Origin: Euprymna scolopes
Lineage: Eukaryota
DNA: 64,000 bases
Reading direction: 5' to 3' (one strand)
Assembly: GCA_053919585.1 (NCBI GenBank)
Contig: CM132792.1
The notes below the pieces were generated by a model that saw nothing but the letters and a program-made list of their open reading frames with translations, was not told the origin of the DNA and made no database searches. Within the stretch, counting starts at the first letter, position 1; each line of letters starts with the position of its first letter. This document shows, one piece after another, positions 6,040 to 57,838 of this stretch. The position numbers and the translations under genes were made by a program.

Positions 6040-9039
6040 TTCTAGAAAAAATACACAATTAAACCCAGATCTCCATCTTCCAACATAGAACCCCACTATC
6101 ATGTCTCCTTCTCCAACATCAGGGGTCTACGTTCTAACGTTCCAGAGGTTGAAACACAATTACAGGAAACTAAACCACACCTATTATTCCTACTATTCCT
6201 AAGTGAAACTGGCATTGGACAGACTATTTCTCTAGATAAGTTCGTAATAGGATACTCTTACTTAACTTCCAAATCTGACCCCCAAGATCGCCATGGGCAT
6301 GGAATATATGAATAAGATGGCTTCCCATGTGGCAGGGACATTTCCAGAGAAGATCTTAACTTACCCTATATGTGCTTCCGGGTTGCGCTTGCTCACACTA
6401 CTGCATTTATATTTACTCTCTATTGCCCCCACAACAGCGGAGTTACTATCTTTAAAAGCATATCTGAGAAAATTGACCACGTCCTATCTGCTTATCCTTC
6501 AGCTAACATTCACATATGTGGAGACTTCAATGTTAACAATGTGGAATGGTTAACCCACTAAACAAGCCCAATGATGAGGTGAGGTTCTGTCATGATTTCT
6601 CCATTGTTTATGACCTCACTTAGATTGTTCACGAACTCACTTCTGTGCCCGACACTGACGGCCAATATGCAAGTCTTCTAAACCTTTTTCTCACAATTGT
6701 CTGAACTATGTTCAGCTTCCGTTCTATCTCCACTTGGATCTTCCAACCACTCTGTTGTAATTGATACAGATAAGATAAAAATGAAATGTAATAAGTCCTC
6801 AGACGTACCTCTCCATCCTACAGTATATCAATACTCTATAGCTGACTGGGATAGCTTCCGTACATTTATATTAGATCTACCTCTGCATTCCATGTTTAAA
6901 AAGGATGTGTCCGCTATAGTATCAGACGTGATGGAATAGTTAATTGTAGGTATAGACCTTTTCATACCTTCGAAAAAGTTCCAGCAAAAACCTAACAGCC
7001 AGCTGTGGTTCTCTCCAGAATGTACTGCTTCCATTGTGCACAGAAATCACTTTTTCCATTGCTTCCAATGTAATAGATGTACTGAGACTAAAGCTGCTTT
7101 CAGCACTGCCAGCAACCACTGTAGAAAAGTAATAAAGAATGCAAGAGAGTTGTATGCTCAGTCAGAAGTCTGAGCAGCGGCTTCATTTCCACCAGTTTTG
7201 GCAAATTGCAAACAGAATCTTGAACAGAAGCGTGTGCTCTATCCCAACTATCATCAATTGACCTGAGGTAATTTCGTCAGCATCAGACAAAGCCAAACTC
7301 TTTGCCAAGAACTTTGCAGCTAATTCTACCCTTGTGACCAAGGCCGCGAACCTCCAATATTTTCTCCTGTATCAGAAAACACACTATGTGTTATAAAAAT
7401 ATCTATACGTGATATTGCCAAGCTAATCAAAAACTTTGATTCCAGTTAAGTAACTGGCCCTGACGGTATTCCAATTATAGTACTCAAAAAACTTCAACCA
7501 GAACTAGCACCCATACTTACAAAACTGTTTAAACGTTGTCTTAAGGAGAATTGCTTCCCATCACCCTGGAAAATCTCATCAGTATGCCCTGTATTTAAGA
7601 ATTCAGGTGATCAGTCATCTCCAATAAGTCTACTGTGGGTCATGAGTAAGTTGCTGGAATCTGTGTTAAATAGAGAAGTAATCAACCATCTCAGCAAAAA
7701 TAACTTTCTTAGTGACACACAATATGGTTTCCATTCTGCTAGATCTACAGCAGATGTGCTTACAGTTATATCTCATAGGATTAGTGAATCTCTCAACAGA
7801 GGCTACCTTTCAAGGGCAATTGCTGTTGACATATCAAAGGCCTTCGATAGGGTATGGCATAAAGGTTTACTTCACAAAATCTCCAGCTTTGGTATAGCTG
7901 GAAATGTCTTCTCAATTATTAAATCATTTCTCTCTGATAGGTTCATAAGAATATTGGTTGATGGGCAAAAAATTAGAAGCTCACAGTATTAATGCTGGAG
8001 TCCCTCAGGGGTCCATCTTGGGCCCAAATCTTTTCCTGATCTACATTAATGATCTTCCAAATCACATCCTTACATCATTTGTAGACAATTATGCTGATGA
8101 CACTACCATCTATAGTAGCACATCTAAGTCAATAAACGACCAAGTTCTCTCTAATTCCCTCTCCTCTGATCTTGAGCACATGCTACAATGGGGAAAGGAA
8201 TGGCTGGTTACATTTAATGCATCTAAAACCAAGCTTCTCTCTTTACATCATCAGCGTTCTGACCCCCATCTGGCATCAATTGAAATGAATGGCTCTCGTC
8301 TTGAGGAGGCCTCAAGTTTTGACAAACTTCTGAGCTTGACCTTACTCCTGATCTTAAATGGGACAGGTACATCAAATCTGTTGCCAAGGAAAAATGGTGG
8401 GATCCTTCTATCGATCTAGTAGATATCTCATTGCTGATGCAATTCTCTATCTATATAAGAGGCAGGTACGTCCAAGGATGGAATATTGTTGCCACTTCTG
8501 GGTAGGAGCTGCTAGAAAGGACTTGTCCTGCCTTAATAGACTTCCTAGTCTCGTAGGAGATATCCTTTTCTCTTCCCTGCAACCTCTATCTCACAGAAGA
8601 GATGTTGTGAGTTTGTCTCTGATGTATCGTTATTTTCATGGAAAGTGTTCGACTGAGCTTCAGTCTATGGTCCCCCCTCGCCAAACTTTCACAAGAAACA
8701 CTCGTCTGGCTGAAAACACTATCAATAATTCCCCCCCCCACTCGTTATCTGTGCCTAAACCTAAACGTAGATTCCATGAACAAAGCTTCTTTCTTAGAAC
8801 TGCACACCTGTGGAATTGTCTTCCGTTTTCCTGCTTTCCAGCTGACTACAATATGGTTGTCTTCAAGTCTAACATAAACAAGTTCTTGATGAGCCGTCCC
8901 ACTTGTTAACAAATTTACCAAATTTTCTATTACTAACGATTACTATATTGTCCAATTTCTACTGTACACTATTTAACCCTTGTCCTCGAGTGGCCTCTTG
9001 GCCTTGATAAGTGGTGATGCCTGTGTAAAAAAAAAAAAA
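6040..9039 (+). mobile_element. Near full-length degenerate CR1/L2-group LINE ORF2 (APE endonuclease + reverse transcriptase) with 3' UTR and poly(A)
   Basis: Endonuclease motifs SFSNIRGLRSN..LSET and HICGDFNV; RT motifs TGPDG, QYGF, DISKAFDRVWHKGL, GVPQGSILGP, YADD; multiple stops and frameshifts; A14 tail at ~9026-9039. The 5' end may extend to ~5500. Confidence 0.93.
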
Positions 9040-9946
9040 ATGGATTAAAAGTTCGATGTTGTGAAAAAATGTGGAAATGTTCTTAAAAGGAAGAGTTCTG
9101 GCATAAAAGCAATGTTTCTAACTGGTGTATATAGTTGCTTGGACTATATTTAGATTTTAAAACAATCTGATAAGGTTTAGATTAAAATATGCAGTAAAGA
9201 GCAAGAGAGAGAAATCTTTCTCTGACTGAGGCAGAATGTTATTTTTGCAGAATACATGTTTCTTTCTTTTTTTTAGGTAAAGGAAAATAAAGTTTGTTAT
9301 TTCAATCGGTTCCATGAATATATCTGATGCAATGCAGAGTTATATATTTTCTTTTGGTAATTAATCCAGGGAGATTTACGGGTTCCAGATGCATGGTGCA
9401 CAAAATCATAATAACGGTTTTAACGTCTGGAGAAACAGCAAGGGTTGTGTGCTTGTTAACACTTCAAGGGAAATCTGACTCAACTGACTGGGTTTCATGT
9501 GCAGTGCCTTTTTTTTTATAGGTGCAGACCGGCTCCAGCAAAAATGTTAGAAAAATCTTTTTGAAATTTGCTTTCTTTGAATGCCGATTGGATGAAAAGT
9601 TAAGGTCTCTGTCACATGGGGTGCTTTCAACTACATTGGTGCGAAAAGACAGAATTTTAGTTTTTATGCCGGCAGAATTAGCGTGGATGTAGAAAACAGA
9701 TGTATGCACAACTGGAACGGTCCTTGTCCAGCCACTTCTAATGTTTGTGGCGAGTCTTTATGAGTATATGAACTTTAATGAAATAAGATTTGATAAACTC
9801 ATAGCACTTGTGCTTTTTTACAAGAATCTTTATCATTTTTTTCAGTAAGCTTTTCATAAATTTTCCCTGCGGTTGGCACGATGTTGAATAGGTAAGCCAT
9901 ATAATTATATCTGATTAGTTTTGCTTGAACTCCTTTAGCACCGCAC

Positions 9947-11579: not shown

Positions 11580-13537
11580 GGCGCTTATGTCAACGGATCA
11601 TCAAATCTAAGAGAGATAGCCATCATAAAAATAGCAAAAATAAGCATATTTTGCAAGATATAATTTGGGACGCTAAAATAATCAGTAGAACAATGAAAGA
11701 ATGTTAAACAAAAAAAAAATTGATTACACACAAAAAAAAAATTGATTACACACACAAAAAAAAATTGATTACACACAAAAAAAAATTGATTACACACAAA
11801 AAAAATTGATTACACACACAAAAAAATTGATTACACACAAAAAAAAATTGATTACACACACACAAAAATTGATTACACACACAAAAAAAAATTGATTACA
11901 CACACAAAAAAAATTGATTACACACAAAAAAAAATTGATTACACACAAAAAAAAATTGATTACACACACAAAAAAAATTGATTACACACACAAAAAAATT
12001 GATTACACACAAAAAAAAATTGATTACACACAAAAAAAATTGATTACACACACAAAAAAAATTGATTACACACACAAAAAAAATTGATTACACACACAAA
12101 AAAAATTGATTACACACACAAAAAAATTGATTACACACACAAAAAAAATTGATTACACACACAAAAAAAATTGATTACACACACACACAAAAAAATTGAT
12201 TACACACAAAAAAAATTGATTACACACACAAAAAAAATTGATTACACACAAAAAAAAATTGATTACACACACAAAAAAAATTGATTACACACACAAAAAA
12301 AATTGATTACACACACAAAAAAAATTGATTACACACACAAAAAAAATTGATTACACACACAGAAAAAATTGATTACACACACAAAAAAAAATTGATTACA
12401 CACAAAAAAAATTGATTACACACAAAAAAAAATTGATTACACACACAAAAAAAATTGATTACACACACAAAAAAAATTGATTACACACACAAAAAAAAAT
12501 TGATTACACACAAAAAAAAATGATTACACACACAAAAAAAAATTGATTACACACACAAAAAAAAAATGATTACACACACAAAAAAAAAATTGATTACACA
12601 CACAAAAAAAATTGATTACACACAAAAAAAAATTGATTACACACAAAAAAAATTGATTACACACAAAAAAAAAAAATGATTACACACACAAAAAAAATGA
12701 TTACACACACACACAAAAAAATGTTTTTCCTTATTTTAGGTAATTAGTCAGCGTCAGGATGATTAAAACTTTTTTGAAGGAGATTTTGAAGTATTTGAAC
12801 CATCAATGATTAAAGTTTAATTTAACTTTTTTTTTCATTTTTTAAAAAATTTTTTTTTACTATTCTGTAGTTTCATTTTGCAAGGTATAATTTGGGCCGC
12901 ATAATAATTAACGTACACAAAACAAAGAAAATAGAAAACTATTTAAAACCGTCAATGTAAATTTTTTTTTTTTTTAACGAAAATAAAAAATTAAAAAATA
13001 AAAAATTTGTTTTTCTCTATTTTAGGTAATCAGTCATTTCTGTCTTTGATTAGGAAAAATAACAACGTTCAAAGATTCTGCACAAGATAAAGTGTTCGGG
13101 TTTTTTTTTGGTTTTTTTTTTTTGGTTCTCTTAAATAAGGGAAGCATTTTTCTTTGACTAATTGGAAAACAACTTCTTGGTTGATTAACAAGTTTATTTA
13201 ATTTTTGTTGTTGATTAATTAATTTCATTGTAACAGGTTGTTTACTTTTGTTTTGTGTAATACGTTAATTAATAAGTTTATTTTGTTACTTAACATGGTT
13301 ATATTTTTAAGTTCGTTGATTAACTTCGCTAACTTATTTCCTTTTTGTAAATTGCTTCAACAATTTCCGGAACTCGGCTATAGTAATCTTCTTTCTTTTT
13401 TTTTTTTTTTTTTTCATTTTAGCATTCTGCCATTGTTCTAATGTTCTACTGAATTATATCTTGTAAAATATGCTTATTTTTACTATGTTTATGCTGATTA
13501 TCTCCCTTAGATTTAATGATCCGTTGACATAAGCGCC
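11580..13537. mobile_element. Merlin-like non-autonomous DNA transposon (1958 bp) with ~120-bp TIRs and 8-bp TSD
   Basis: Left end ggcgcttatgtcaacggatcatcaaatctaag, right end cttagatttaatgatccgttgacataagcgcc. TSD ttgaattt at 11572-11579 and 13538-13545. GG...CC termini with an 8-bp TSD fit Merlin. Empty site in units (~26725). Confidence 0.85.
11708..12722. repeat. Minisatellite, ~20-23 bp unit A(7-10)TTGATT(AC)3-5, roughly 45-50 copies
   Basis: Directly visible; lies inside the Merlin-like element. Confidence 0.98.
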
Positions 13538-13597: not shown

Positions 13598-13782
13598 NNN
13601 NNNNNNNNNNNNNNNNNNNNNNNNNNNNNNNNNNNNNNNNNNNNNNNNNNNNNNNNNNNNNNNNNNNNNNNNNNNNNNNNNNNNNNNNNNNNNNNNNNNN
13701 NNNNNNNNNNNNNNNNNNNNNNNNNNNNNNNNNNNNNNNNNNNNNNNNNNNNNNNNNNNNNNNNNNNNNNNNNNNNNNNNNN
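13598..13782. other. Assembly gap (N run); others at 21585-21714 and 54227-54368
   Basis: Runs of N. The latter two coincide with (TA)n tracts seen in sister units. Confidence 1.
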
Positions 13783-15129: not shown

Positions 15130-15550
15130 TTCTTTCCCATTTTTCTTTTTAATTTCTGTGTCTCTCTTTATCACCCCCTCTCTCTTTCTCATATTCCTAA
15201 CTCTAGCTTCTCTTCTCTTCTCCCTCTCTTGCTTTCTGTTCCTTTTTCCTCTTTCTCTTTTTTCGGCTTACGCTATTCGTTTTAACTACATTATCTCCAA
15301 TTCCTTCATCCTCCTCTTCCTCACAACTCTCCTTCTCCTCCTCCTCCTCCTTGTCTCTCTCTGTTCCTTTTTTCTATTTTTATTTTCTCCTCTTCCTCAT
15401 TCTCATATCATAAAAACCTGTTTCCTCTTCTCAATTTTCTCCTTTCTCCCCCTCCTCCTACTTTCTCTCTTCACTTCACTTTCGCTCTCTTGACCACTCT
15501 CTTTGTTAATCATTTACGGCATTCGCTTCCTCCCACTACTTCTCTTATCA
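15130..15550 (+). repeat. Polypyrimidine (CT-rich) tract upstream of the HMG gene (also ~28110-29090, 41600-42580, 55990-56410)
   Basis: Strongly C/T-biased low-complexity tract ending ~190 bp before each ATG. Confidence 0.9.
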
Positions 15551-15739
15551 TTAGCTGTTTTTATTCGAGACGCCAAGTCATTTTCTGTTTGAGACGCTAC
15601 TCAAAAGATACACGCTACCATAACAAGTAAACAAGATCCACAGTGATTAACTTTTATTTTAATTAATAAGTGAGAAACGACCTTTTTTGGGGCTATTCTT
15701 TCGCAAAAAAGTTAAACAAAAAAAAAAAATTATTTCAAA

Positions 15740-16981
15740 ATGGACGCTCCAAAGATCCAGAAAAATAAAGATGAGGTTAGAAAAAAGAAAGATGTTAAAG
15801 TGAACGCTTCTTCACGCGTCCAGAAAAAAAATGGTCGTGTTAAAAAGCCCCTGAATGCTTATTTCGTCTGGTGCAAACAGTTCAGAAAACAAATACGTGA
15901 ACAAAATCCGACCATCACCATTATTGAAGCCAATGCCCTTCTCGGGAAAATATGGAGTGAAATGTCAGCGGAACAGAAAAAACCTTACTTCAAAGAGGCA
16001 GAACTTATCAAGAAACAACACCAATTAGATTATCCCGATTTCGAGTTTAAGTCGAAACCACGTGTTAAAAACCCCAACAGGTTCCATGCCTACCCCTATC
16101 AACAACATGTGGTGTATTACATACAAACGCTGCCAAGCAAAGATAGAATGCCTCAGGAATATTTTCATGAATCCACTTTCTTTGAGGTAACAAACAAAGC
16201 GGTAACTCAAGAAAATTCTCCTCACGTGGTCGGTACAGATGAAAGCATCAGATCCACGTTTTCTGAAATGCCATCCGAGACACGCGAGAATCTTTCCAAC
16301 AAGAACAGCGTATGTGTTCCGCTGCCAGAGACCGAACTCGACAAGGAGTCACGGGCATTCAGTAATGAACACCTATACAAAAGGCAGTCGAAATACAATC
16401 CCGTAATCATGACGGCTGGCCAAGACAACGATAGAGAGGTGATGGAATTTTCGTCTACTCACTCCAAATCCGAGAGCATTTCTGAAACGCTTCCTCACGC
16501 ACCTGAGCAAAACGGGGTTTATTTTCATCCTGAATGTTACGGTCATGAATGCAATAATAGTAAGTCACAAAATTTTACAGCTTTAACTTACTCGCAAGCT
16601 AAAAATAAACTAATAGAAAAGTTTCAATTCTTAGACGAGAATTCGCCTATAAATACACCAATATGCAACGCAAATATTTTTCTTGGTGTTGAGAACGATA
16701 AAAATACGACGTTTTCTGAAGAAACTCTTGAAGAAGCCCAACATCTCACTTTTGTTGAAGATTATATTATCAATGCAACACCAAATACCGAGGAACATAT
16801 CAACCAATGCACCGAAATGTTCCCCAACACGAAATCTGATATTTTGAACGATGACGATTTCGAATCCCTTAATTGTCTGGAAGATTTGGTCTCGACTTTC
16901 TGCTTAGGTGAAGATTTCCCATCTACAATGTTTTGGAACGAAGAAGGTATTAATTTGGAAGACTTTGCAGAACTGTTGTGA
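15740..16981 (+). CDS. Divergent Sox-type (SoxH/SOX30-like) HMG-box transcription factor, copy 1 (413 aa, single ORF)
   Basis: HMG box at aa ~31-108 (NGRVKKPLNAYFVW...LGKIWSEMSAEQKKPYFKEAELIKKQHQLDYPDF), basic N-terminus, acidic C-terminus (…EEGINLEDFAELL*), caaaATG start context, uninterrupted 1242-bp ORF in AT-rich DNA. Confidence 0.92.
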   Translation: MDAPKIQKNKDEVRKKKDVKVNASSRVQKKNGRVKKPLNAYFVWCKQFRKQIREQNPTITIIEANALLGKIWSEMSAEQKKPYFKEAELIKKQHQLDYPDFEFKSKPRVKNPNRFHAYPYQQHVVYYIQTLPSKDRMPQEYFHESTFFEVTNKAVTQENSPHVVGTDESIRSTFSEMPSETRENLSNKNSVCVPLPETELDKESRAFSNEHLYKRQSKYNPVIMTAGQDNDREVMEFSSTHSKSESISETLPHAPEQNGVYFHPECYGHECNNSKSQNFTALTYSQAKNKLIEKFQFLDENSPINTPICNANIFLGVENDKNTTFSEETLEEAQHLTFVEDYIINATPNTEEHINQCTEMFPNTKSDILNDDDFESLNCLEDLVSTFCLGEDFPSTMFWNEEGINLEDFAELL

Positions 16982-17572
16982 TTTTGTATATCGATTGATA
17001 ATGCAATCGATTAATTTGATCACATGATCGATGTTATCGTTTGATATCATGTGTATATATTTTCTATTGTTCAATTTGTTTAATGTTATTTATTGATTTT
17101 AATTTTTTTCATTAGTGATTTTAAAAAAGTATGACTGTCAGGAATCTCGGATAACGAAAGATAAACAGCTAAGCAAGCATACATCATATGCAAAAATTTT
17201 ACCAACGATCAAACATCATTTTTAGAGTATTGATTTATTTAACGAGCAGTTTTAACAAGTTTGTTGTTACAATAATAATAAACATAATCGGATGTGTGTG
17301 TGTGTGTTAATTTAAAACGAAACGAAACCAACGACTATACATTAAACGTACAGAAACAGTAGATACATACGAAAGAAACACTTTATAAATTAGTTTCTCG
17401 TTATTTTGTTTATTAATTATTGAATTTCTTTTTTTAATAATTCTGTAAAATAAATTTTATTTCAATAAAATGTTTCATGTAACGTTAAATTTGTTTGTTT
17501 ATTTATTGCAAAATGTAAGTTTCATCCGACAAGGCCGGATTAAGCTTACAGAGAGACATTTTTTTGTTTTCT

Positions 17573-18241: not shown

Positions 18242-18389
18242 TAATGTTAACCAAGGTAAACATCAAAACAACCAATGTCATTCATTGTTGGATCAAAATT
18301 TGTTATATATATATAACGTAATAATCAGTAATAAATATATAATTTCTCATATTTAATATTGATAATTATGTTTATATAGGAAAAGGCTG

Positions 18390-19740
18390 TAAGCACCGCC
18401 AAAACTGTGGGGGCAGGTAAGTACTTTTTGACGGACCGTCTTTTTAAAAATCTACCAAAAATCAGATAATTATCCGATCAATACGAAATTTTCAGCGATT
18501 ATTAGGAGAAGAATGAACTTTATAACAGTGTACTTATTTTTCATAAACGATATTTATATATATTTTTTTTTTTGCTTACAAACCCCCCCTTGTTTTGAAG
18601 TGGTACAAATATGCTTAAAATAATCATCTGAAACTGAACACAACATATTGTGTTGTTGTAAGGGACAGAATTATAGATTAAAAAAAATAAATAAATGAAT
18701 TGTTTGCATACCTTATTTGGACGTTTGAATATCAGAACTTCGATTGTGTTTAATTATCCCGCTTTTGAGTTTTAAGTGTGAAATTCGGTGAATATGTTAA
18801 GTAAAATAATTAATTTAAGTTAAGCAAAACAAAAAAATTTTTTTTTTAATATTTATACGAAAAAAGCCATTTTAAAATTTTTGATAAATAAATTAACAAT
18901 TTTTTTTAGCGAGCCGAATAATGCATGACCATTATTAAACAGGGCATGCTTTGAATAATCGATACAAAAAAAAAAAAAATTCGATAAATATTGTGCCCTT
19001 TGTGTTAAAAATAGCATCATTTTTTTCGATCCCGTTTGAAAACGTTTGCCGCCTTTCGACTACGGTGCACCAAACGCGCTGAAATAATTTTTTTTTTATT
19101 CTGCTTTAAATTGCCCCTCCCCCCATTTTGGGGAGCCTGACCCCCACACACATACACATTAAAAACCAAACTCATACAAATGGTCACCCATCTGGTACTG
19201 GCCAGCCTCAGCTTAATAATACATTGAAATTTTCGTCACTGAAAAATAAGTTTTTTTGGCCTGTTTGGTCTTCCATAGTTTTCTTCTTATCAAACGCAAA
19301 CGTAAACAGAGTCGATCTAGACTCTAGATCGACGCGAAATATCTGGTTACCTATATGAATAAGTGGCATTATTTGAAATTTAGGTACTTATATTATAATA
19401 TTTTTGCATATTCTCTTAGAAAATCATCCTAAATCTTAGTTAGACAATAAATAAATAAATGAATTATTTCAAAAACCTTTTTTTTTTTAAATATTTATGT
19501 ACGTTTTTTGTGCAAGACAAAAAATGTCAATTGTAAACTTTTTGGGAAATTTTAACATTTAAAATTTAATTAAAAATAGTAGAAAAAGTTTTACATTATT
19601 CTGTTTTCTATATGATAAAATTCAGGGTTTTATCTTTCTGGAAAAAAAAAGTTACTCAGAAATAATGGAGTTTAATAAATGTAATTTCGTTTTAAAAAAC
19701 AACAACAACTTGATTTTGCGGCCATTTTTGGCGGTGCCTA
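18390..19740. mobile_element. Non-autonomous TIR DNA element (1351 bp), unit 1 copy
   Basis: TIRs ta(a/g)gcaccgccaaaa / ttttggcggtgccta flanked by ggctg / ggcta. Absent from unit 3 (empty site aggaaaaagctaatg at ~45942-45956). Confidence 0.8.
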
Positions 19741-19812
19741 GGCTAATGTATTAAAGGCTAAATAAAATATTTACTTGGAAATGGTTGATGGATAAAAAAA
19801 TAGATTTTAGAA

Positions 19813-29281: not shown

Positions 29282-30520
29282 ATGGACGCTCCAAAGATCC
29301 AGAAAAATAAGGATCAGGTTAGAAAAAAGAAAGATGTTAAAATGAACGCTTCACGCGTCCAGAAAAAAAATGGTCGTGTTAAAAAGCCCCTGAATGCTTA
29401 TTTCGTCTGGTGCAAACAGTTCAGAAAACAAATACGTGAACAAAATCCGACCATCACCATTATTGAAGCCAATGCCCTTCTCGGGAAAATATGGAGTGAA
29501 ATGTCAGCGGAACAGAAAAAACCTTACTTCAAAGAGGCAGAACTTATCAAGAAACAACACCAATTAGATTATCCCGATTTCGAGTTTAAGTCGAAACCAC
29601 GTGTTAAAAACCCCAACAGGTTCCATGCCTACCCCTATCAACAACATGTGGTGTATTACATACAAACGCTGCCAAGCAAAGATAGAATGCCTCAGGAATA
29701 TTTTCATGAATCCACTTTCTTTGAGGTAACAAACAAAGCGGTAACTCAAGAAAATTCTCCTCACGTGGTCGGTACAGATGAAAGCATCAGATCCACGTTT
29801 TCTGAAATGCCATCCGAGACACGCGAGAATCTTTCCAACAAGAACAGCGTATGTGTTCCGCTGCCAGAGACCGAACTCGACAAGGAGTCACGGGCATTCA
29901 GTAATGAACACCTATACAAAAGGCAGTCGAAATACAATCCCGTAATCATGACGGCTGGCCAAGACAACGATAGAGAGGTGATGGAATTTTCGTCTACTCA
30001 CTCCAAATCCGAGAGCATTTCTGAAACGCTTCCTCACGCACCTGAGCAAAACGGGGTTTATTTTCATCCTGAATGTTACGGTCATGAATGCAATAATAGT
30101 AAGTCACAAAATTTTACAGCTTTAACTTACTCGCAAGCTAAAAATAAACTAATGGAAAAGTTTCAATTCTTAGACGAGAATTCGCCTATAAATACACCAA
30201 TATGCAATGCAAATATTTTTCTTGGTGTTGAGAACGATAAAAATACGACGTTTTCTGAAGAAACTCTTGAAGAAGCCCAACATCTCACTTTTGTTGAAGA
30301 TTATATTATCAATGCAACACCAAATACCGAGGAACATATCAACCAATGCACCGAAATGTTCCCAAACTCTAAATCTGATATTTTGAACGATGACGATTTC
30401 GAATCCCTGAATTGCCTGGAAGATTTGGTCTCGACTTTCTGCTTAGGTGAAGATTTCCCATCTACAATGTTTTGGGACGAAGAAGGTATTAATTTGGAAG
30501 ACTTTGCAGAACTGTTGTGA
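29282..30520 (+). CDS. Sox-type HMG-box transcription factor, copy 2 (412 aa)
   Basis: Intact ORF nearly identical to copy 1, with an identical HMG box. Confidence 0.92.
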   Translation: MDAPKIQKNKDQVRKKKDVKMNASRVQKKNGRVKKPLNAYFVWCKQFRKQIREQNPTITIIEANALLGKIWSEMSAEQKKPYFKEAELIKKQHQLDYPDFEFKSKPRVKNPNRFHAYPYQQHVVYYIQTLPSKDRMPQEYFHESTFFEVTNKAVTQENSPHVVGTDESIRSTFSEMPSETRENLSNKNSVCVPLPETELDKESRAFSNEHLYKRQSKYNPVIMTAGQDNDREVMEFSSTHSKSESISETLPHAPEQNGVYFHPECYGHECNNSKSQNFTALTYSQAKNKLMEKFQFLDENSPINTPICNANIFLGVENDKNTTFSEETLEEAQHLTFVEDYIINATPNTEEHINQCTEMFPNSKSDILNDDDFESLNCLEDLVSTFCLGEDFPSTMFWDEEGINLEDFAELL

Positions 30521-42758: not shown

Positions 42759-43997
42759 ATGGACGCTCCAAAGATCCAGAAAAATAAAGATGAGGTTAGA
42801 AAAAAGAAAGATGTTAAAGTGAACGCTTCACGCGTCCAGAAAAAAAATGGTCGTGTTAAAAAGCCCCTGAATGCTTATTTCGTCTGGTGCAAACAGTTCA
42901 GAAAACAAATACGTGAACAAAATCCGACCATCACCATTATTGAAGCCAATGCCCTTCTCGGGAAAATATGGAGTGAAATGTCAGCGGAACAGAAAAAACC
43001 TTACTTCAAAGAGGCAGAACTTATCAAGAAACAACACCAATTAGATTATCCCGATTTCGAGTTTAAGTCGAAACCACGTGTTAAAAACCCCAACAGGTTC
43101 CATGCCTACCCCTATCAACAACATGTGGTGTATTACATACAAACGCTGCCAAGCAAAGATAGAATGCCTCAGAAATATTTTCATGAATCCACTTTCTTTG
43201 AGGTAACAAACAAAGCGGTAACTCAAGAAAATTCTCCTCACGTGGTCGGTACAGATGAAAGCATCAGATCCACGTTTTCTGAAATGCCATCCGAGACACG
43301 CGAGAATCTTTCCAACAAGAACAGCGTATGTGTTCCGCTACCAGAGACCGAACTCGACAAGGAGTCACGGGCATTCAGTAATGAACACCTATACAAAAGG
43401 CAGTCGAAATTCAATCCCGTTACCATGACGGCTGGCCAAGACAACGATAGAGAGGTGATGGAATTTTCGTCTACTCACTCCAAATCCGAGAGCATTTCTG
43501 AAACGCTTCCTCACGCACCTGAGCAAAACGGGGTTTATTTTCATCCTGAATGTTACGGTCATGAATGCAATAATAGTAAGTCACAAAATTTTACAGCTTT
43601 AACTTACTCGCAAGCTAAAAATAAACTAATGGAAAAGTTTCAATTCTTAGACGAGAATTCGCCTATAAATACACCAATATGCAACGCAAATATTTTTCTT
43701 GGTGTTGAGAACGATAAAAATACGACGTTTACTGAAGAAACTCTTCAAGGAGCCCAACATCTCACTTTTGTTGAAAATGATATTATCAATGCAACACCAA
43801 ATAACGAGGAGCATATCAACCAATGCACCGAAATGTTCCCAAACTCTAAATCTAATATTTTGAACGATGACGATTTCAAATCCCTGAATTGCCTGGAAGA
43901 TTTGGTCTCGGCTTTCTGCTTAGGTGAAGATTTCCCATCTACAATGTTTTGGAATGAAGAAGGTATTAATTTGGAAGACTTTGCAGAACTGTTGTGA
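42759..43997 (+). CDS. Sox-type HMG-box transcription factor, copy 3 (412 aa; most divergent C-terminus)
   Basis: Intact ORF. Start placed at the ATG homologous to the other copies rather than the upstream GTG (42696) used by the ORF track. Confidence 0.92.
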   Translation: MDAPKIQKNKDEVRKKKDVKVNASRVQKKNGRVKKPLNAYFVWCKQFRKQIREQNPTITIIEANALLGKIWSEMSAEQKKPYFKEAELIKKQHQLDYPDFEFKSKPRVKNPNRFHAYPYQQHVVYYIQTLPSKDRMPQKYFHESTFFEVTNKAVTQENSPHVVGTDESIRSTFSEMPSETRENLSNKNSVCVPLPETELDKESRAFSNEHLYKRQSKFNPVTMTAGQDNDREVMEFSSTHSKSESISETLPHAPEQNGVYFHPECYGHECNNSKSQNFTALTYSQAKNKLMEKFQFLDENSPINTPICNANIFLGVENDKNTTFTEETLQGAQHLTFVENDIINATPNNEEHINQCTEMFPNSKSNILNDDDFKSLNCLEDLVSAFCLGEDFPSTMFWNEEGINLEDFAELL

Positions 43998-56599: not shown

Positions 56600-57838
56600 A
56601 TGGACGCTCCAAAGATCCAGAAAAATAAGGATCAGGTTAGAAAAAAGAAAGATGTTAAAATGAACGCTTCACGCGTCCAGAAAAAAAATGGTCGTGTTAA
56701 AAAGCCCCTGAATGCTTATTTCGTCTGGTGCAAACAGTTCAGAAAACAAATACGTGAACAAAATCCGACCATCACCATTATTGAAGCCAATGCCCTTCTC
56801 GGGAAAATATGGAGTGAAATGTCAGCGGAACAGAAAAAACCTTACTTCAAAGAGGCAGAACTTATCAAGAAACAACACCAATTAGATTATCCCGATTTCG
56901 AGTTTAAGTCGAAACCACGTGTTAAAAACCCCAACAGGTTCCATGCCTACCCCTATCAACAACATGTGGTGTATTACATACAAACGCTGCCAAGCAAAGA
57001 TAGAATGCCTCAGGAATATTTTCATGAATCCACTTTCTTTGAGGTAACAAACAAAGCGGTAACTCAAGAAAATTCTCCTCACGTGGTCGGTACAGATGAA
57101 AGCATCAGATCCACGTTTTCTGAAATGCCATCCGAGACACGCGAGAATCTTTCCAACAAGAACAGCGTATGTGTTCCGCTACCTGAGACCGAACTCGACA
57201 AGGAGTCACCGGCATTCAGTAATGAACACCTATACAAAAGGCAGTCGAAATTCAATCCCGTTACCATGACGGCTGGCCAAGACAACGATAGAGAGGTGAT
57301 GGAATTTTCGTCTACTCACTCCAAATCCGAGAGCATTTCTGAAACGCTTCCTCACGCACCTGAGCAAAACGGGGTTTATTTTCATCCTGAATGTTACGGT
57401 CATGAATGCAATAATAGTAAGTCACAAAATTTTACAGCTTTACCTTTCTCGCAAGCTAAAAATAAACTAATGGAAAAGTTTCAATTCTTAGACGAGAATT
57501 CGCCTATAAATACACCAATATGCAACGCAAATATTTTTCTTGGTGTTGAGAACGATAAAAATACGACGTTTTCTGAAGAAACTCTTGAAGAAGCCCAACA
57601 TCTCACTTTTGTTGAAGATGACATTATCAATGCAACACCAAATACCGAGGAACATATCAACCAATGCACCGAAATGTTCCCCAACACGAAATCTGATATT
57701 TTGAACGATGACGATTTCGAATCCCTTAATTGTCTGGAAGATTTGGTCTCGACTTTCTGCTTAGGTGAAGATTTCCCATCTACAATGTTTTGGAACGACG
57801 AAGGTATTAATTTGGAAGACTTTGCAGAACTGTTGTGA
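56600..57838 (+). CDS. Sox-type HMG-box transcription factor, copy 4 (412 aa)
   Basis: Intact ORF. Start placed at the homologous ATG rather than the upstream GTG (56528). Confidence 0.92.
   Translation: MDAPKIQKNKDQVRKKKDVKMNASRVQKKNGRVKKPLNAYFVWCKQFRKQIREQNPTITIIEANALLGKIWSEMSAEQKKPYFKEAELIKKQHQLDYPDFEFKSKPRVKNPNRFHAYPYQQHVVYYIQTLPSKDRMPQEYFHESTFFEVTNKAVTQENSPHVVGTDESIRSTFSEMPSETRENLSNKNSVCVPLPETELDKESPAFSNEHLYKRQSKFNPVTMTAGQDNDREVMEFSSTHSKSESISETLPHAPEQNGVYFHPECYGHECNNSKSQNFTALPFSQAKNKLMEKFQFLDENSPINTPICNANIFLGVENDKNTTFSEETLEEAQHLTFVEDDIINATPNTEEHINQCTEMFPNTKSDILNDDDFESLNCLEDLVSTFCLGEDFPSTMFWNDEGINLEDFAELL

What the first reader, a model, noticed from the sequence alone, without database searches (positions are those of the whole stretch)
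15830..16063. HMG box looks SoxH/SOX30-derived but has rewired DNA-contact residues
Seen: NGRVKKPLNAYFVWCKQFRKQIREQNPTITIIEANALLGKIWSEMSAEQKKPYFKEAELIKKQHQLDYPDFEFKSKP. Aligned by eye to recalled sequences, the NG.VK start, S.EQKKPY and EA..IK..H match SOX30/SoxH better than SRY/SoxB. The Sox signature RPMNAFMVW has become KPLNAYFVW (KKPLNA is TCF/LEF-like). Helix-2 NSEIS is IIEAN, placing a hydrophobic residue where sequence-specific boxes have Asn and non-specific HMGB boxes have a second intercalator. The tail YxY is FxF. Known: SOX30 and molluscan SoxH are testis-biased. Inference: a fast-evolving SoxH offshoot with altered or relaxed DNA specificity.
Basis: partly seen in the sequence, partly recalled or inferred. 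Interest (0 to 1): 0.8.

Follow-up and report, generated by a model that had tools for sequence, protein, structure and literature searches.

The report
Rewired SoxH-type HMG box, tandem array
A cephalopod-like genome carries repeated copies of an intron-free gene descended from the sperm-development factor SOX30/SoxH, whose DNA-binding domain has replaced seven of the ten DNA-contact residues that are otherwise fixed in Sox proteins, yet is identical in all four copies.

Summary
The peptide is real. It is the HMG box (Pfam E=4e-19) of an intact, intronless 413-aa ORF (15740-16981, +). The ORF occurs four times in the window, about 13.5 kb apart.

SoxH descent is supported, but not by the box alone. 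Without a bridging sequence the box cannot be placed: AU tests do not reject SoxH, SoxF or a position beside HMGB1 box B. The only full-length relative is a single-copy, intronless cuttlefish protein (Sepia pharaonis "SOX15_30"). Its box matches human SOX30 far better than any other solved Sox box (100 vs 78 bits). With it included, the window box joins the SOX30 clade (95/86).

The rewiring is confirmed. Of the ten core Sox DNA-contact residues, only N8, R18 and W41 remain. K5, N34 and F72 resemble LEF-1; F11 and I30 match HMGB1 box B.

The box is not decaying. It has 0 differences in 345 nt among the copies, against 2-4.5% elsewhere. It folds onto Sox-DNA structures. One run has transcript-like depth over the ORF; two polyA runs have none.

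Altered or relaxed specificity remains an inference. Tissue is unknown, and so is whether the array is an orthologue or a paralogue of the cuttlefish gene. The scan had already noted this array on neighbouring DNA (s1-244823, s1-244934).

The parts
15740..16981 (+). Copy 1 of the intronless SoxH-derived gene: 413-aa ORF including stop, ATG in a strong context (A at -3, G at +4)
   Evidence: ORF list; sequence; full-length homology to cuttlefish SoxH-like P0001/P0155
15740..15799 (+). 20-residue basic N-terminal extension, absent from the cuttlefish homologue. The cuttlefish start Met aligns with residue 21, which is Met in copies 2 and 4 and Val in copies 1 and 3
   Evidence: Alignment A2; copy variants
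15833..16069 (+). HMG box, Sox box positions 1-79 (protein residues 32-110). Three helices, L-shaped Sox-type fold
   Evidence: Pfam; AF2 model pLDDT 89.4; Foldseek onto SOX18/17/2/11-DNA complexes, rmsd 0.7-0.9 A
15845..15865 (+). KPLNAYF: K5 (Sox R5), L7 (M7), retained N8, Y10 (F10), F11 (M11, the primary intercalating wedge)
   Evidence: Alignments; core contact list in PMC4856986; K at this position is the LEF-1 state (PMC11458547)
15884..15886 (+). Retained R18 (SRY R20), a base-contacting Arg whose Ala substitution costs SRY 21-fold in affinity
   Evidence: PMC11458547
15917..15934 (+). Helix-2 contact patch T29-I30-I31-E32-A33-N34 (Sox H29-N30-x-E-x-S34). I30 is the HMGB1 box B state. 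N34 is unique among the 67 Sox boxes and is the LEF-1 state
   Evidence: PMC4498601; PMC11458547
16040..16048 (+). F70-E71-F72 (Sox Y70-K71-Y72; SOX30 W70-V71-Y72). The Tyr72 hydroxyl that hydrogen-bonds a base is lost. The codons for Y67-P68-D69-F70 are continuous, where several SoxH-clade gene calls run into unrelated sequence right after 'YPG'
   Evidence: intron statement in PMC13219418
16760..16978 (+). Acidic, hydrophobic C-terminal tail (residues 341-413, pI 4.05), conserved with the cuttlefish protein. Inferred to be a transactivation-type region; predicted mostly disordered with short helices
15394..17300 (+). Approximate transcribed span, unspliced. Contig depth in run X3 is 255-1050 here against under 80 in the flanks. 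AATAAA lies at 17277
   Evidence: read laying; polyA signal scan
29282..30520 (+). Copy 2, intact 412-aa ORF. Box at 29372-29608 is identical in nucleotides to copy 1
42759..43997 (+). Copy 3, intact 412-aa ORF. Box at 42849-43085 is identical in nucleotides to copy 1
56600..57838 (+). Copy 4, intact 412-aa ORF. Box at 56690-56926 is identical in nucleotides to copy 1

Best explanation
The box is the DNA-binding domain of a lineage-specific, intronless, tandemly amplified descendant of the cephalopod SoxH (SOX30-type) gene.

Shown:
- It shares its whole length with a single-copy intronless cuttlefish SoxH-like gene, whose own box is clearly SOX30-like.
- It keeps the Sox-type three-helix fold.
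- It keeps N8, R18 and W41, but has replaced the other seven 'invariant' Sox contact residues: R5K, F10Y, M11F, H29T, N30I, S34N and Y72F.
- The box region is identical at the nucleotide level in all four copies, while the rest of the unit differs by 2-4.5%.
- Depth in one run looks like an unspliced transcript of about 1.9 kb over the ORF, and two polyA RNA runs show none.

Inferred: the protein still binds and bends the minor groove as a Sox-like transcription factor, with a basic N-terminal half and an acidic activation-type tail. N8 and R18 are kept, and position 5 stays basic (Lys for Arg). In SRY, alanine at these three positions weakened binding most. The base hydrogen bonds of N30 and Y72 are lost and that of S34 is altered; alanine at these positions changed SRY affinity twofold or less. 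A second hydrophobic wedge (I30, with F11) is gained, as in HMGB1 box B. I therefore expect a core ACAAT-like preference that is weakened or shifted, and a changed bend, rather than loss of binding. By analogy with SoxH elsewhere, expression is probably in the male germline, but that is untested.
For: - Identity and structure: Pfam HMG_box E=4e-19. The AF2 box model has pLDDT 89.4 and superposes on SOX18/17/2/11-DNA complexes at 0.7-0.9 A.
- Only full-length relative: P0001, E=2e-73, with the box 53% and the C-terminal 314 aa 42% identical. Its 90% cluster holds 'SOX15_30 [Sepia pharaonis]'.
- That protein's box scores 100 bits to SOX30 (7jjk) against 78 for the next single box.
- ML tree: window and P0155 are sisters (97/89) inside a clade that holds proteins named SOX30 (95/86). 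H plus the two cephalopod boxes form one side of a branch in 100% of bootstraps.
- SoxH-diagnostic states are kept at positions 0-1, 35, 59-60 and 71.
- Contact residues were compared with the core list in PMC4856986 and the SRY alanine scan in PMC11458547.
- Constraint: 0/345 variable nucleotides in the box region, against pi of 2.0% in the rest of the CDS and 2.4-4.5% in the flanks. Pairwise dN/dS is 0.2-0.6. All four ORFs are intact.
- Transcript-like depth in X3, zero depth in polyA runs X20 and X21.
- Charge: pI 10.0 for residues 1-113 and 4.05 for residues 341-413.
Against: - Without the cuttlefish sequence the box is not placed in SoxH, and AU tests do not reject SoxF or a position beside HMGB1 box B.
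- Even with it, forcing the pair into SoxF is not formally rejected (delta lnL 23.6, p-AU 0.10).
- The tree has only 81 columns.
- X3 is only guessed to be RNA, and contig depth is a poor measure of expression. The tissue is unknown.
- No binding data exist. The effect of N30I, S34N and Y72F together cannot be read from single alanine substitutions in SRY.
- Nucleotide identity of the box among copies could partly reflect gene conversion rather than selection.
Confidence: 0.7

Rival explanations
1. The array is not an offshoot. It is this species' own orthologue of the cuttlefish SoxH-like gene, amplified in place and diverged, with no canonical SoxH left in the genome.
For: Only one full-length relative type was found among 1.84 billion representatives. 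The cuttlefish gene is also intronless and of the same architecture. dS against the cuttlefish transcript is about 0.8-1.5 over the C-terminal part, which could fit either a species split or an old duplication.
Against: Nothing here excludes it. I could not search the rest of this genome, and a sequence look-up in the scan's notes was blank. The canonical gene is single-copy within +/-10 kb in two cuttlefish-type assemblies, so the array state is derived either way.
Confidence: 0.35
2. The box has become a sequence-neutral, HMGB-like architectural DNA bender (for example a germline chromatin protein) rather than a site-specific transcription factor.
For: F11 and I30 are the residues of HMGB1 box B at its two wedge positions. 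A second nonpolar residue at the start of helix 2 marks non-sequence-specific boxes (PMC2691818; PMC4498601). The gap between the best Sox score and the HMGB scores is only about 18 bits. AU does not reject a position next to HMGB1 box B.
Against: N8 and R18, invariant in all 66 other Sox boxes and shared with LEF-1, are kept. HMGB1 box B has Ser at position 8. The protein is acidic overall (pI 5.3) with an acidic, hydrophobic tail conserved with the cuttlefish SoxH, which is unlike basic sperm chromatin proteins. Other SOX30-clade proteins also lack N30, with F, I, T, K or Q in 7 of 19.
Confidence: 0.15
3. The copies are decaying retro-pseudogenes or an assembly artefact, and the odd contact residues are drift.
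For: The gene is intronless, lies in a repeat-rich region with N gaps, and the units are 93-99% alike.
Against: All four ORFs are intact with no frameshift. dN/dS is 0.2-0.6. The box region has 0/345 variable nucleotides against 2-4.5% around it. Depth is transcript-like, and contigs carry variants specific to different copies, for example the 3-nt deletion at 15807 and 15769 A>G. The model is confident.
Confidence: 0.03
4. The box belongs to another sequence-specific HMG family (TCF/LEF, CIC, HBP1, BBX, TOX).
For: K5, L7, N34 and a non-Tyr at 72 are LEF-1 states (PMC11458547).
Against: PDB scores are LEF1 33, CIC 32-33, TOX 34, HBP1 and BBX 24 bits or less, against 54-68 for Sox boxes. Full-length homology is to a SOX30-like protein. 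There is no CTNNB1-binding or C1 domain. The multi-box protein P0010, whose boxes I judged TCF-like by eye (not labelled by any tool), did not attract it in the tree.
Confidence: 0.02

Closest known systems
SOX30 / molluscan SoxH (Sox group H)
   Same: There is one HMG box near the N-terminal half and a long, mostly disordered remainder. The box shares group-H states: NG before the box, a non-basic residue at 35 (19/19 H against 0/47 others), IK at 59-60, Y52 and a non-basic residue at 71. Its sister, the cuttlefish protein, scores 100 bits to the human SOX30 box. The tree places both in the clade with proteins named SOX30.
   Different: Canonical SoxH has an intron at a conserved position inside the box (PMC13219418), is reported from single loci, and binds ATTGT/ACAAT. 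This gene is intronless, is present in at least four tandem copies, is much shorter (413 aa against 753-1010), and has lost 7 of 10 core contacts. Human SOX30 has lost 1 of 10 and cuttlefish SoxH 3 of 10. Its box is 33-42% identical to other SoxH boxes, no more than to other groups.
Cuttlefish 'SOX15_30' protein (CAE1301939.1, Sepia pharaonis; P0155/P0001/P0163)
   Same: The proteins are collinear over the whole length, both CDSs are intronless, and they share RPLNAFFVW-type L7/F11, F72 and the acidic C-terminal block.
   Different: The cuttlefish gene is single-copy within +/-10 kb and 587-592 aa long, and it keeps R5, F10, N30 and S34. The window protein lacks a linker of about 100 aa and a tail of about 87 aa, and gains 20 N-terminal residues. 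It has 15 unique box changes against 6.
LEF-1/TCF HMG box
   Same: K at Sox position 5, L at 7 (KKPLNA), N at 34 and no Tyr at 72 (PMC11458547; PMC4498601).
   Different: The score is only 33 bits. LEF-1 has Ser, not Ile, at position 30. The LEF-type basic tail and beta-catenin-binding domain are absent.
HMGB1 box B (non-sequence-specific)
   Same: Phe at the primary wedge position and Ile at the secondary one. 'AYFVWC' aligns with 'AFFLFC'.
   Different: HMGB1 box B has Ser at position 8, where the window keeps the Asn common to sequence-specific boxes. The window protein has a single box with an activation-like tail. The box scores about 50 bits to HMGB boxes against 68 to SOX17.

Membership tests
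HMG-box superfamily | Significant match to the HMG_box profile and an L-shaped three-helix fold | tested here: met
   Pfam PF00505 E=4.2e-19. AF2 pLDDT 89.4 with helices at residues 15-30, 36-49 and 52-72 of the 88-aa segment. Top 19 Foldseek hits are Sox/SRY boxes.
Sox family (classical criteria) | At least about 50% identity to the SRY HMG box (criterion from general knowledge of Sox nomenclature) | tested here: not met
   24/79 = 30% identity to the SRY box of PDB 2gzk. Foldseek gives 29-31% to SRY chains.
Sox family (classical criteria) | RPMNAFMVW motif | tested here: not met
   KPLNAYFVW, 5 of 9 positions. The cuttlefish sister has RPLNAFFVW.
Sox family | Core DNA-contact set R5 N8 F10 M11 R18 H29 N30 S34 W41 Y72 (PMC4856986) | tested here: not met
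   Only N8, R18 and W41 are kept: K5 Y10 F11 T29 I30 N34 F72.
Sox family | Descent from a Sox gene (best matches and phylogeny among HMG families) | tested here: met
   All best single-box PDB hits are Sox, at 54-68 bits, against LEF1/CIC/TOX at 34 or less. Full-length homologue of a SOX30-like protein.
Sox group H (SOX30/SoxH) | Box groups with SOX30 in a phylogeny | tested here: inconclusive
   Met with the cuttlefish bridge: 95/86, and 100% of bootstraps against F. Not met for the box alone: it falls outside the H clade, with AU p of 0.31 for H, 0.22 for F and 0.49 for HMGB1 box B.
Sox group H (SOX30/SoxH) | Group-H signature residues in the box | tested here: met
   NG at 0-1, T29 (not His), A35 (non-basic: 19/19 H, 0/47 others), Y52, IK at 59-60, E71. 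W70 of most SoxH is F here.
Sox group H (SOX30/SoxH) | Conserved intron inside the HMG box (PMC13219418) | tested here: not met
   The ORF is continuous through the whole box, including Y67-P68-D69-F70. The cuttlefish gene is also intronless, 1773 bp for 590 aa. Another SoxH-clade gene, P0129, is also a single ORF.
Sox group H (SOX30/SoxH) | Testis- or spermatid-restricted expression | tested here: inconclusive
   Depth is transcript-like in one run and absent from two polyA runs, but tissues are coded and unknown. Octopus Sox30 is testis-biased (PMC11202624).
Sox group H (SOX30/SoxH) | Binds ACAAT/ATTGT | not testable with these tools
   The scallop SoxH DAP-seq motif is ATTGT (PMC13219418). 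There are no data for this protein.
TCF/LEF | Best box similarity to LEF/TCF, with an N-terminal beta-catenin-binding domain | tested here: not met
   LEF1 scores 33 bits against 68 for SOX17. There is no CTNNB1_binding hit.

The most novel reading that the evidence does not exclude
A Sox-class transcription factor has been turned into a multicopy, fast-diverging germline gene. Its box combines the sequence-reading Asn8/Arg18 of Sox with the double hydrophobic wedge of HMGB, giving a new recognition mode. Its amplification into a macrosatellite (4 copies here; a neighbouring window is noted with 9 more) would reflect dosage selection or genetic conflict in spermatogenesis, as with ampliconic testis genes in other animals.
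Probability: 0.15. Interest if true: 0.85.

Novelty: new variant of a known kind. Interest (0 to 1): 0.6.

Why it matters
Sox boxes are among the most conserved DNA-binding domains in animals. Ten contact residues are described as invariant across all 20 vertebrate paralogues, and Ser34 was invariant in the 66 other Sox boxes aligned here.

This box has replaced seven of those ten residues, yet is under strong constraint and probably expressed. It is a natural experiment on how much of the Sox-DNA interface can be exchanged while keeping function. The cuttlefish protein supplies a ready-made intermediate with 3 of 10 changed.

The case also shows a developmental transcription-factor class, normally held at one copy, amplified as a macrosatellite. 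It adds a cephalopod case to the SoxH genes that lack the box intron reported as strictly conserved.

If expression proves male-germline, it bears on cephalopod spermatogenesis and on the rapid evolution of reproductive regulators.

Tried and rejected
- Word-indexed protein search with the whole protein found nothing. With the cuttlefish box it found only its own cluster and one SOX5. That tool is too insensitive here.
- Exact-sequence look-ups of copies 1 and 2 found no record.
- The ESM Atlas gave only generic Sox clusters at 0.84.
- DNA for the cuttlefish and P0129 loci could not be fetched because the files were too large. Synteny, including the GDPD neighbour, could therefore not be compared.
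- Blastn of the cuttlefish transcript against the window shows only 63-71% CDS similarity and no flank similarity.
- dS over the box is saturated, so there is no usable box dN/dS against cuttlefish.
- The full-length AF2 model with 8 sequences was uninformative outside the box.
- Three classic HMG papers were not held in the library.
- Literature searches found no description of this array or of cephalopod SoxH amplification.
- Pseudogene, TCF/LEF, CIC and HMGB membership were considered and rejected, as set out under the rival explanations.

Full report
**Observation.** window:15830-16063 (+) translates to exactly the peptide quoted; the other strand is closed by stops. The peptide sits in an uninterrupted 413-aa ORF, 15740-16981, with an ATG in a good context. 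Pfam HMG_box matches residues 34-101 at E=4.2e-19. The motif statements hold in HMMER alignments to SRY and SOX17: RPMNAFMVW is KPLNAYFVW, NSEIS is IIEAN, and YKY is FEF.

**Context.** The ORF is one of four intact head-to-tail copies at 15740, 29282, 42759 and 56600, 96-98.5% identical in protein. They lie in a unit of about 13.5-14 kb that is 93-99% alike over its non-coding DNA too. No other ORF of 130 aa or more recurs in the unit except a 141-aa TTG-initiated one, which I did not look at further. Earlier notes of this scan describe the same array continuing beyond the window (s1-244823, nine more copies; s1-244934). I did not test that.

**What family.** Against solved structures, the best single boxes are all Sox: SOX17 68, SOX18 66.5, SOX11 65, SOX30 63, SOX9 62 and SOX2 54 bits. 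HMGB boxes follow at about 50, and TOX, LEF-1, CIC, HBP1 and BBX score 34 or less. So it is Sox-like, but no group stands out.

A full HMMER scan of 1.84 billion representatives found one full-length relative, P0001 (E=2e-73). Its box is 53% identical and the C-terminal 314 aa are 42% identical. Its 90% cluster contains CAE1301939.1, 'SOX15_30 [Sepia pharaonis]'. That protein's box matches human SOX30 (7jjk) at 100 bits, against 78 for SOX9.

**Trees.** ML trees of 81 box columns (LG+C20) were labelled with source names:
- SOX30 or SOX30-like for P0118, P0142 and P0139
- AmphiSox1/2/3 for P0107
- Sox9 for P0141
- Sox7/17 for P0041
- SOX5 for P0164
- SRY and HMGB1 box B for the two boxes of PDB 2gzk

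The window and cuttlefish boxes are sisters (97/89) inside the SOX30 clade (95/86). H plus these two is one side of a branch in all bootstraps.

Without the cuttlefish row the window box drops out of the H clade. AU tests then reject none of H (p 0.31), F (0.22) or a position beside HMGB1 box B (0.49). Forcing the pair into F costs 23.6 lnL units, but p-AU is 0.10. Mean identity of the window box to H rows (37.8%) equals that to other groups (36.5%).

Discrete states do discriminate:
- a non-basic residue at 35: 19/19 H against 0/47 others
- no Lys or Arg at 71: 19/19 H, against K or R in 46 of 47 others
- IK at 59-60: 12/19 against 2/47
- NG before the box: 10/19 H, and not among the six commonest states in the other 47

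The window has the H state at each.

[quoted passage not shown] Several SoxH-clade gene calls in my hit list run into unrelated sequence immediately after '...YPG', which would fit an intron there; this is my inference. The window ORF is continuous through the whole box. So are the cuttlefish genes (1773 bp for 590 aa, 1779 bp for 592 aa) and one further SoxH-clade gene of unknown origin. Retroposition or intron loss preceded the split of the window and cuttlefish genes. I cannot tell which.

**Contact residues.** Klaus et al. list R5, N8, F10, M11, R18, H29, N30, S34, W41 and Y72 as the core contacts invariant among Sox paralogues (PMC4856986).

| Box | Residues at the ten positions | Changed |
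|---|---|---|
| Window | K5 N8 Y10 F11 R18 T29 I30 N34 W41 F72 | 7 |
| Cuttlefish SoxH (P0155) | changes are F11, S29, F72 | 3 |
| Human SOX30 (7jjk) | change is N29 | 1 |

S34 is invariant in the other 66 boxes, so N34 is unique. N30 is lost in 7 of 19 SoxH-clade rows, including a bichir SOX30-like protein that also has Ile. This site is therefore labile in group H.

In SRY, R7, N10, R20, N32, S36 and Y74 hydrogen-bond to bases (SRY numbering is Sox numbering plus 2). Alanine at N32, S36 or Y74 costs twofold or less in affinity. Alanine at R7, N10 or R20 costs 3.5-, 3.8- and 21-fold (PMC11458547). The window keeps N8 and R18 and keeps a basic residue (Lys for Arg) at 5; these are the three positions where alanine cost SRY most. 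The non-conservative changes fall on the three mild positions. The same paper notes that LEF-1 has K7, S32 and N36 and lacks Y74.

I30 and F11 align with the Ile and Phe of HMGB1 box B. A second nonpolar residue at the start of helix 2 characterises non-sequence-specific boxes (PMC2691818; PMC4498601).

**Is it functional?** The evidence points to yes.
- The AF2 model of the box has pLDDT 89.4 and overlays SOX18, SOX17, SOX2 and SOX11 DNA complexes at 0.7-0.9 A. The rest of the protein is predicted disordered.
- Among the four copies, nucleotides 73-417 of the CDS, which include the whole box, have no difference at all. pi is 2.0% in the rest of the CDS, 2.9% in the N-terminal extension and 2.4-4.5% in the UTR and flanks.
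- Pairwise dN/dS is 0.2-0.6.
- A relative-rate test gives 15 window-unique against 6 cuttlefish-unique changes with SoxH outgroups, p about 0.05. The ML end branch is 0.71 against 0.33. The past acceleration is modest and the present constraint is strong.
- Residues 1-113 have pI 10.0, and the last 73 residues have pI 4.05 and are conserved with cuttlefish. This is a transcription-factor layout, not a basic chromatin protein.

**Expression.** Run X3 has contig depth of 255-1050 from about 15400 to 17250, against 2-77 beside it. It carries variants of other copies (the 3-nt deletion at 15807, 15769 A>G). The depth falls at the AATAAA at 17277. Two polyA RNA-seq runs of the same organism show zero depth over the ORF, while the neighbouring high-copy repeat is covered. 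This points to an unspliced, sample-restricted transcript. X3 is only guessed to be RNA, and tissues are hidden. Octopus Sox30 and bivalve SoxH are testis-biased (PMC11202624; PMC13219418), which is an analogy only.

**Open points.**
- Whether this genome also has a cuttlefish-type SoxH, which would make the array a paralogue rather than an amplified orthologue.
- The tissue of expression.
- The actual DNA specificity and bend.

**Verdict.** This is a new, strongly derived variant within Sox group H, noted before by the scan on adjacent DNA.

Noticed in passing
window 11708-12722: A 22-bp satellite (ACACAAAAAAAATTGATTACAC, 46.5 copies, 92% matches) lies in a very AT-rich stretch (GC 22-24%) just left of the first gene copy, next to an N gap at 13598-13782. 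It seems to mark the left edge of the array.
   Followed up: partly
window 18348-19800 (and the equivalent part of each unit): A very high-copy repeat, with contig depth up to 170,000 in X1 and heavy coverage in both polyA RNA runs with a strand bias. It is probably an expressed transposon embedded in every unit and was not classified.
   Followed up: no
window 8467-9036 and 9155-9756: The left flank holds 90-91% matches to the region about 450-1030 bp upstream of the ORF in copies 2 and 3, and to another part of the unit, but no ORF copy.
   Followed up: partly
window 15800-15802 vs 29342-29344, 56660-56662: Residue 21 is Val (GTG) in copies 1 and 3 and Met (ATG) in copies 2 and 4. This position aligns with the start Met of the cuttlefish protein, so the 20-residue basic N-terminal extension is a recent 5' extension of the reading frame.
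   Followed up: partly
protein hits P0118, P0127, P0079, P0139, P0089, P0117: Fish and amphibian 'SOX30-like' proteins also lack the supposedly invariant Asn30 (I, F, F, F, T, K). Group H as a whole seems to tolerate loss of this base contact.
   Followed up: partly
P0129 locus (ENA ERZ25072999): A 681-aa SoxH-clade gene of unknown organism is also a single 2046-bp ORF running through the 'PGW' site. Intronless SoxH genes therefore exist outside this family, despite the reported strictly conserved intron.
   Followed up: no
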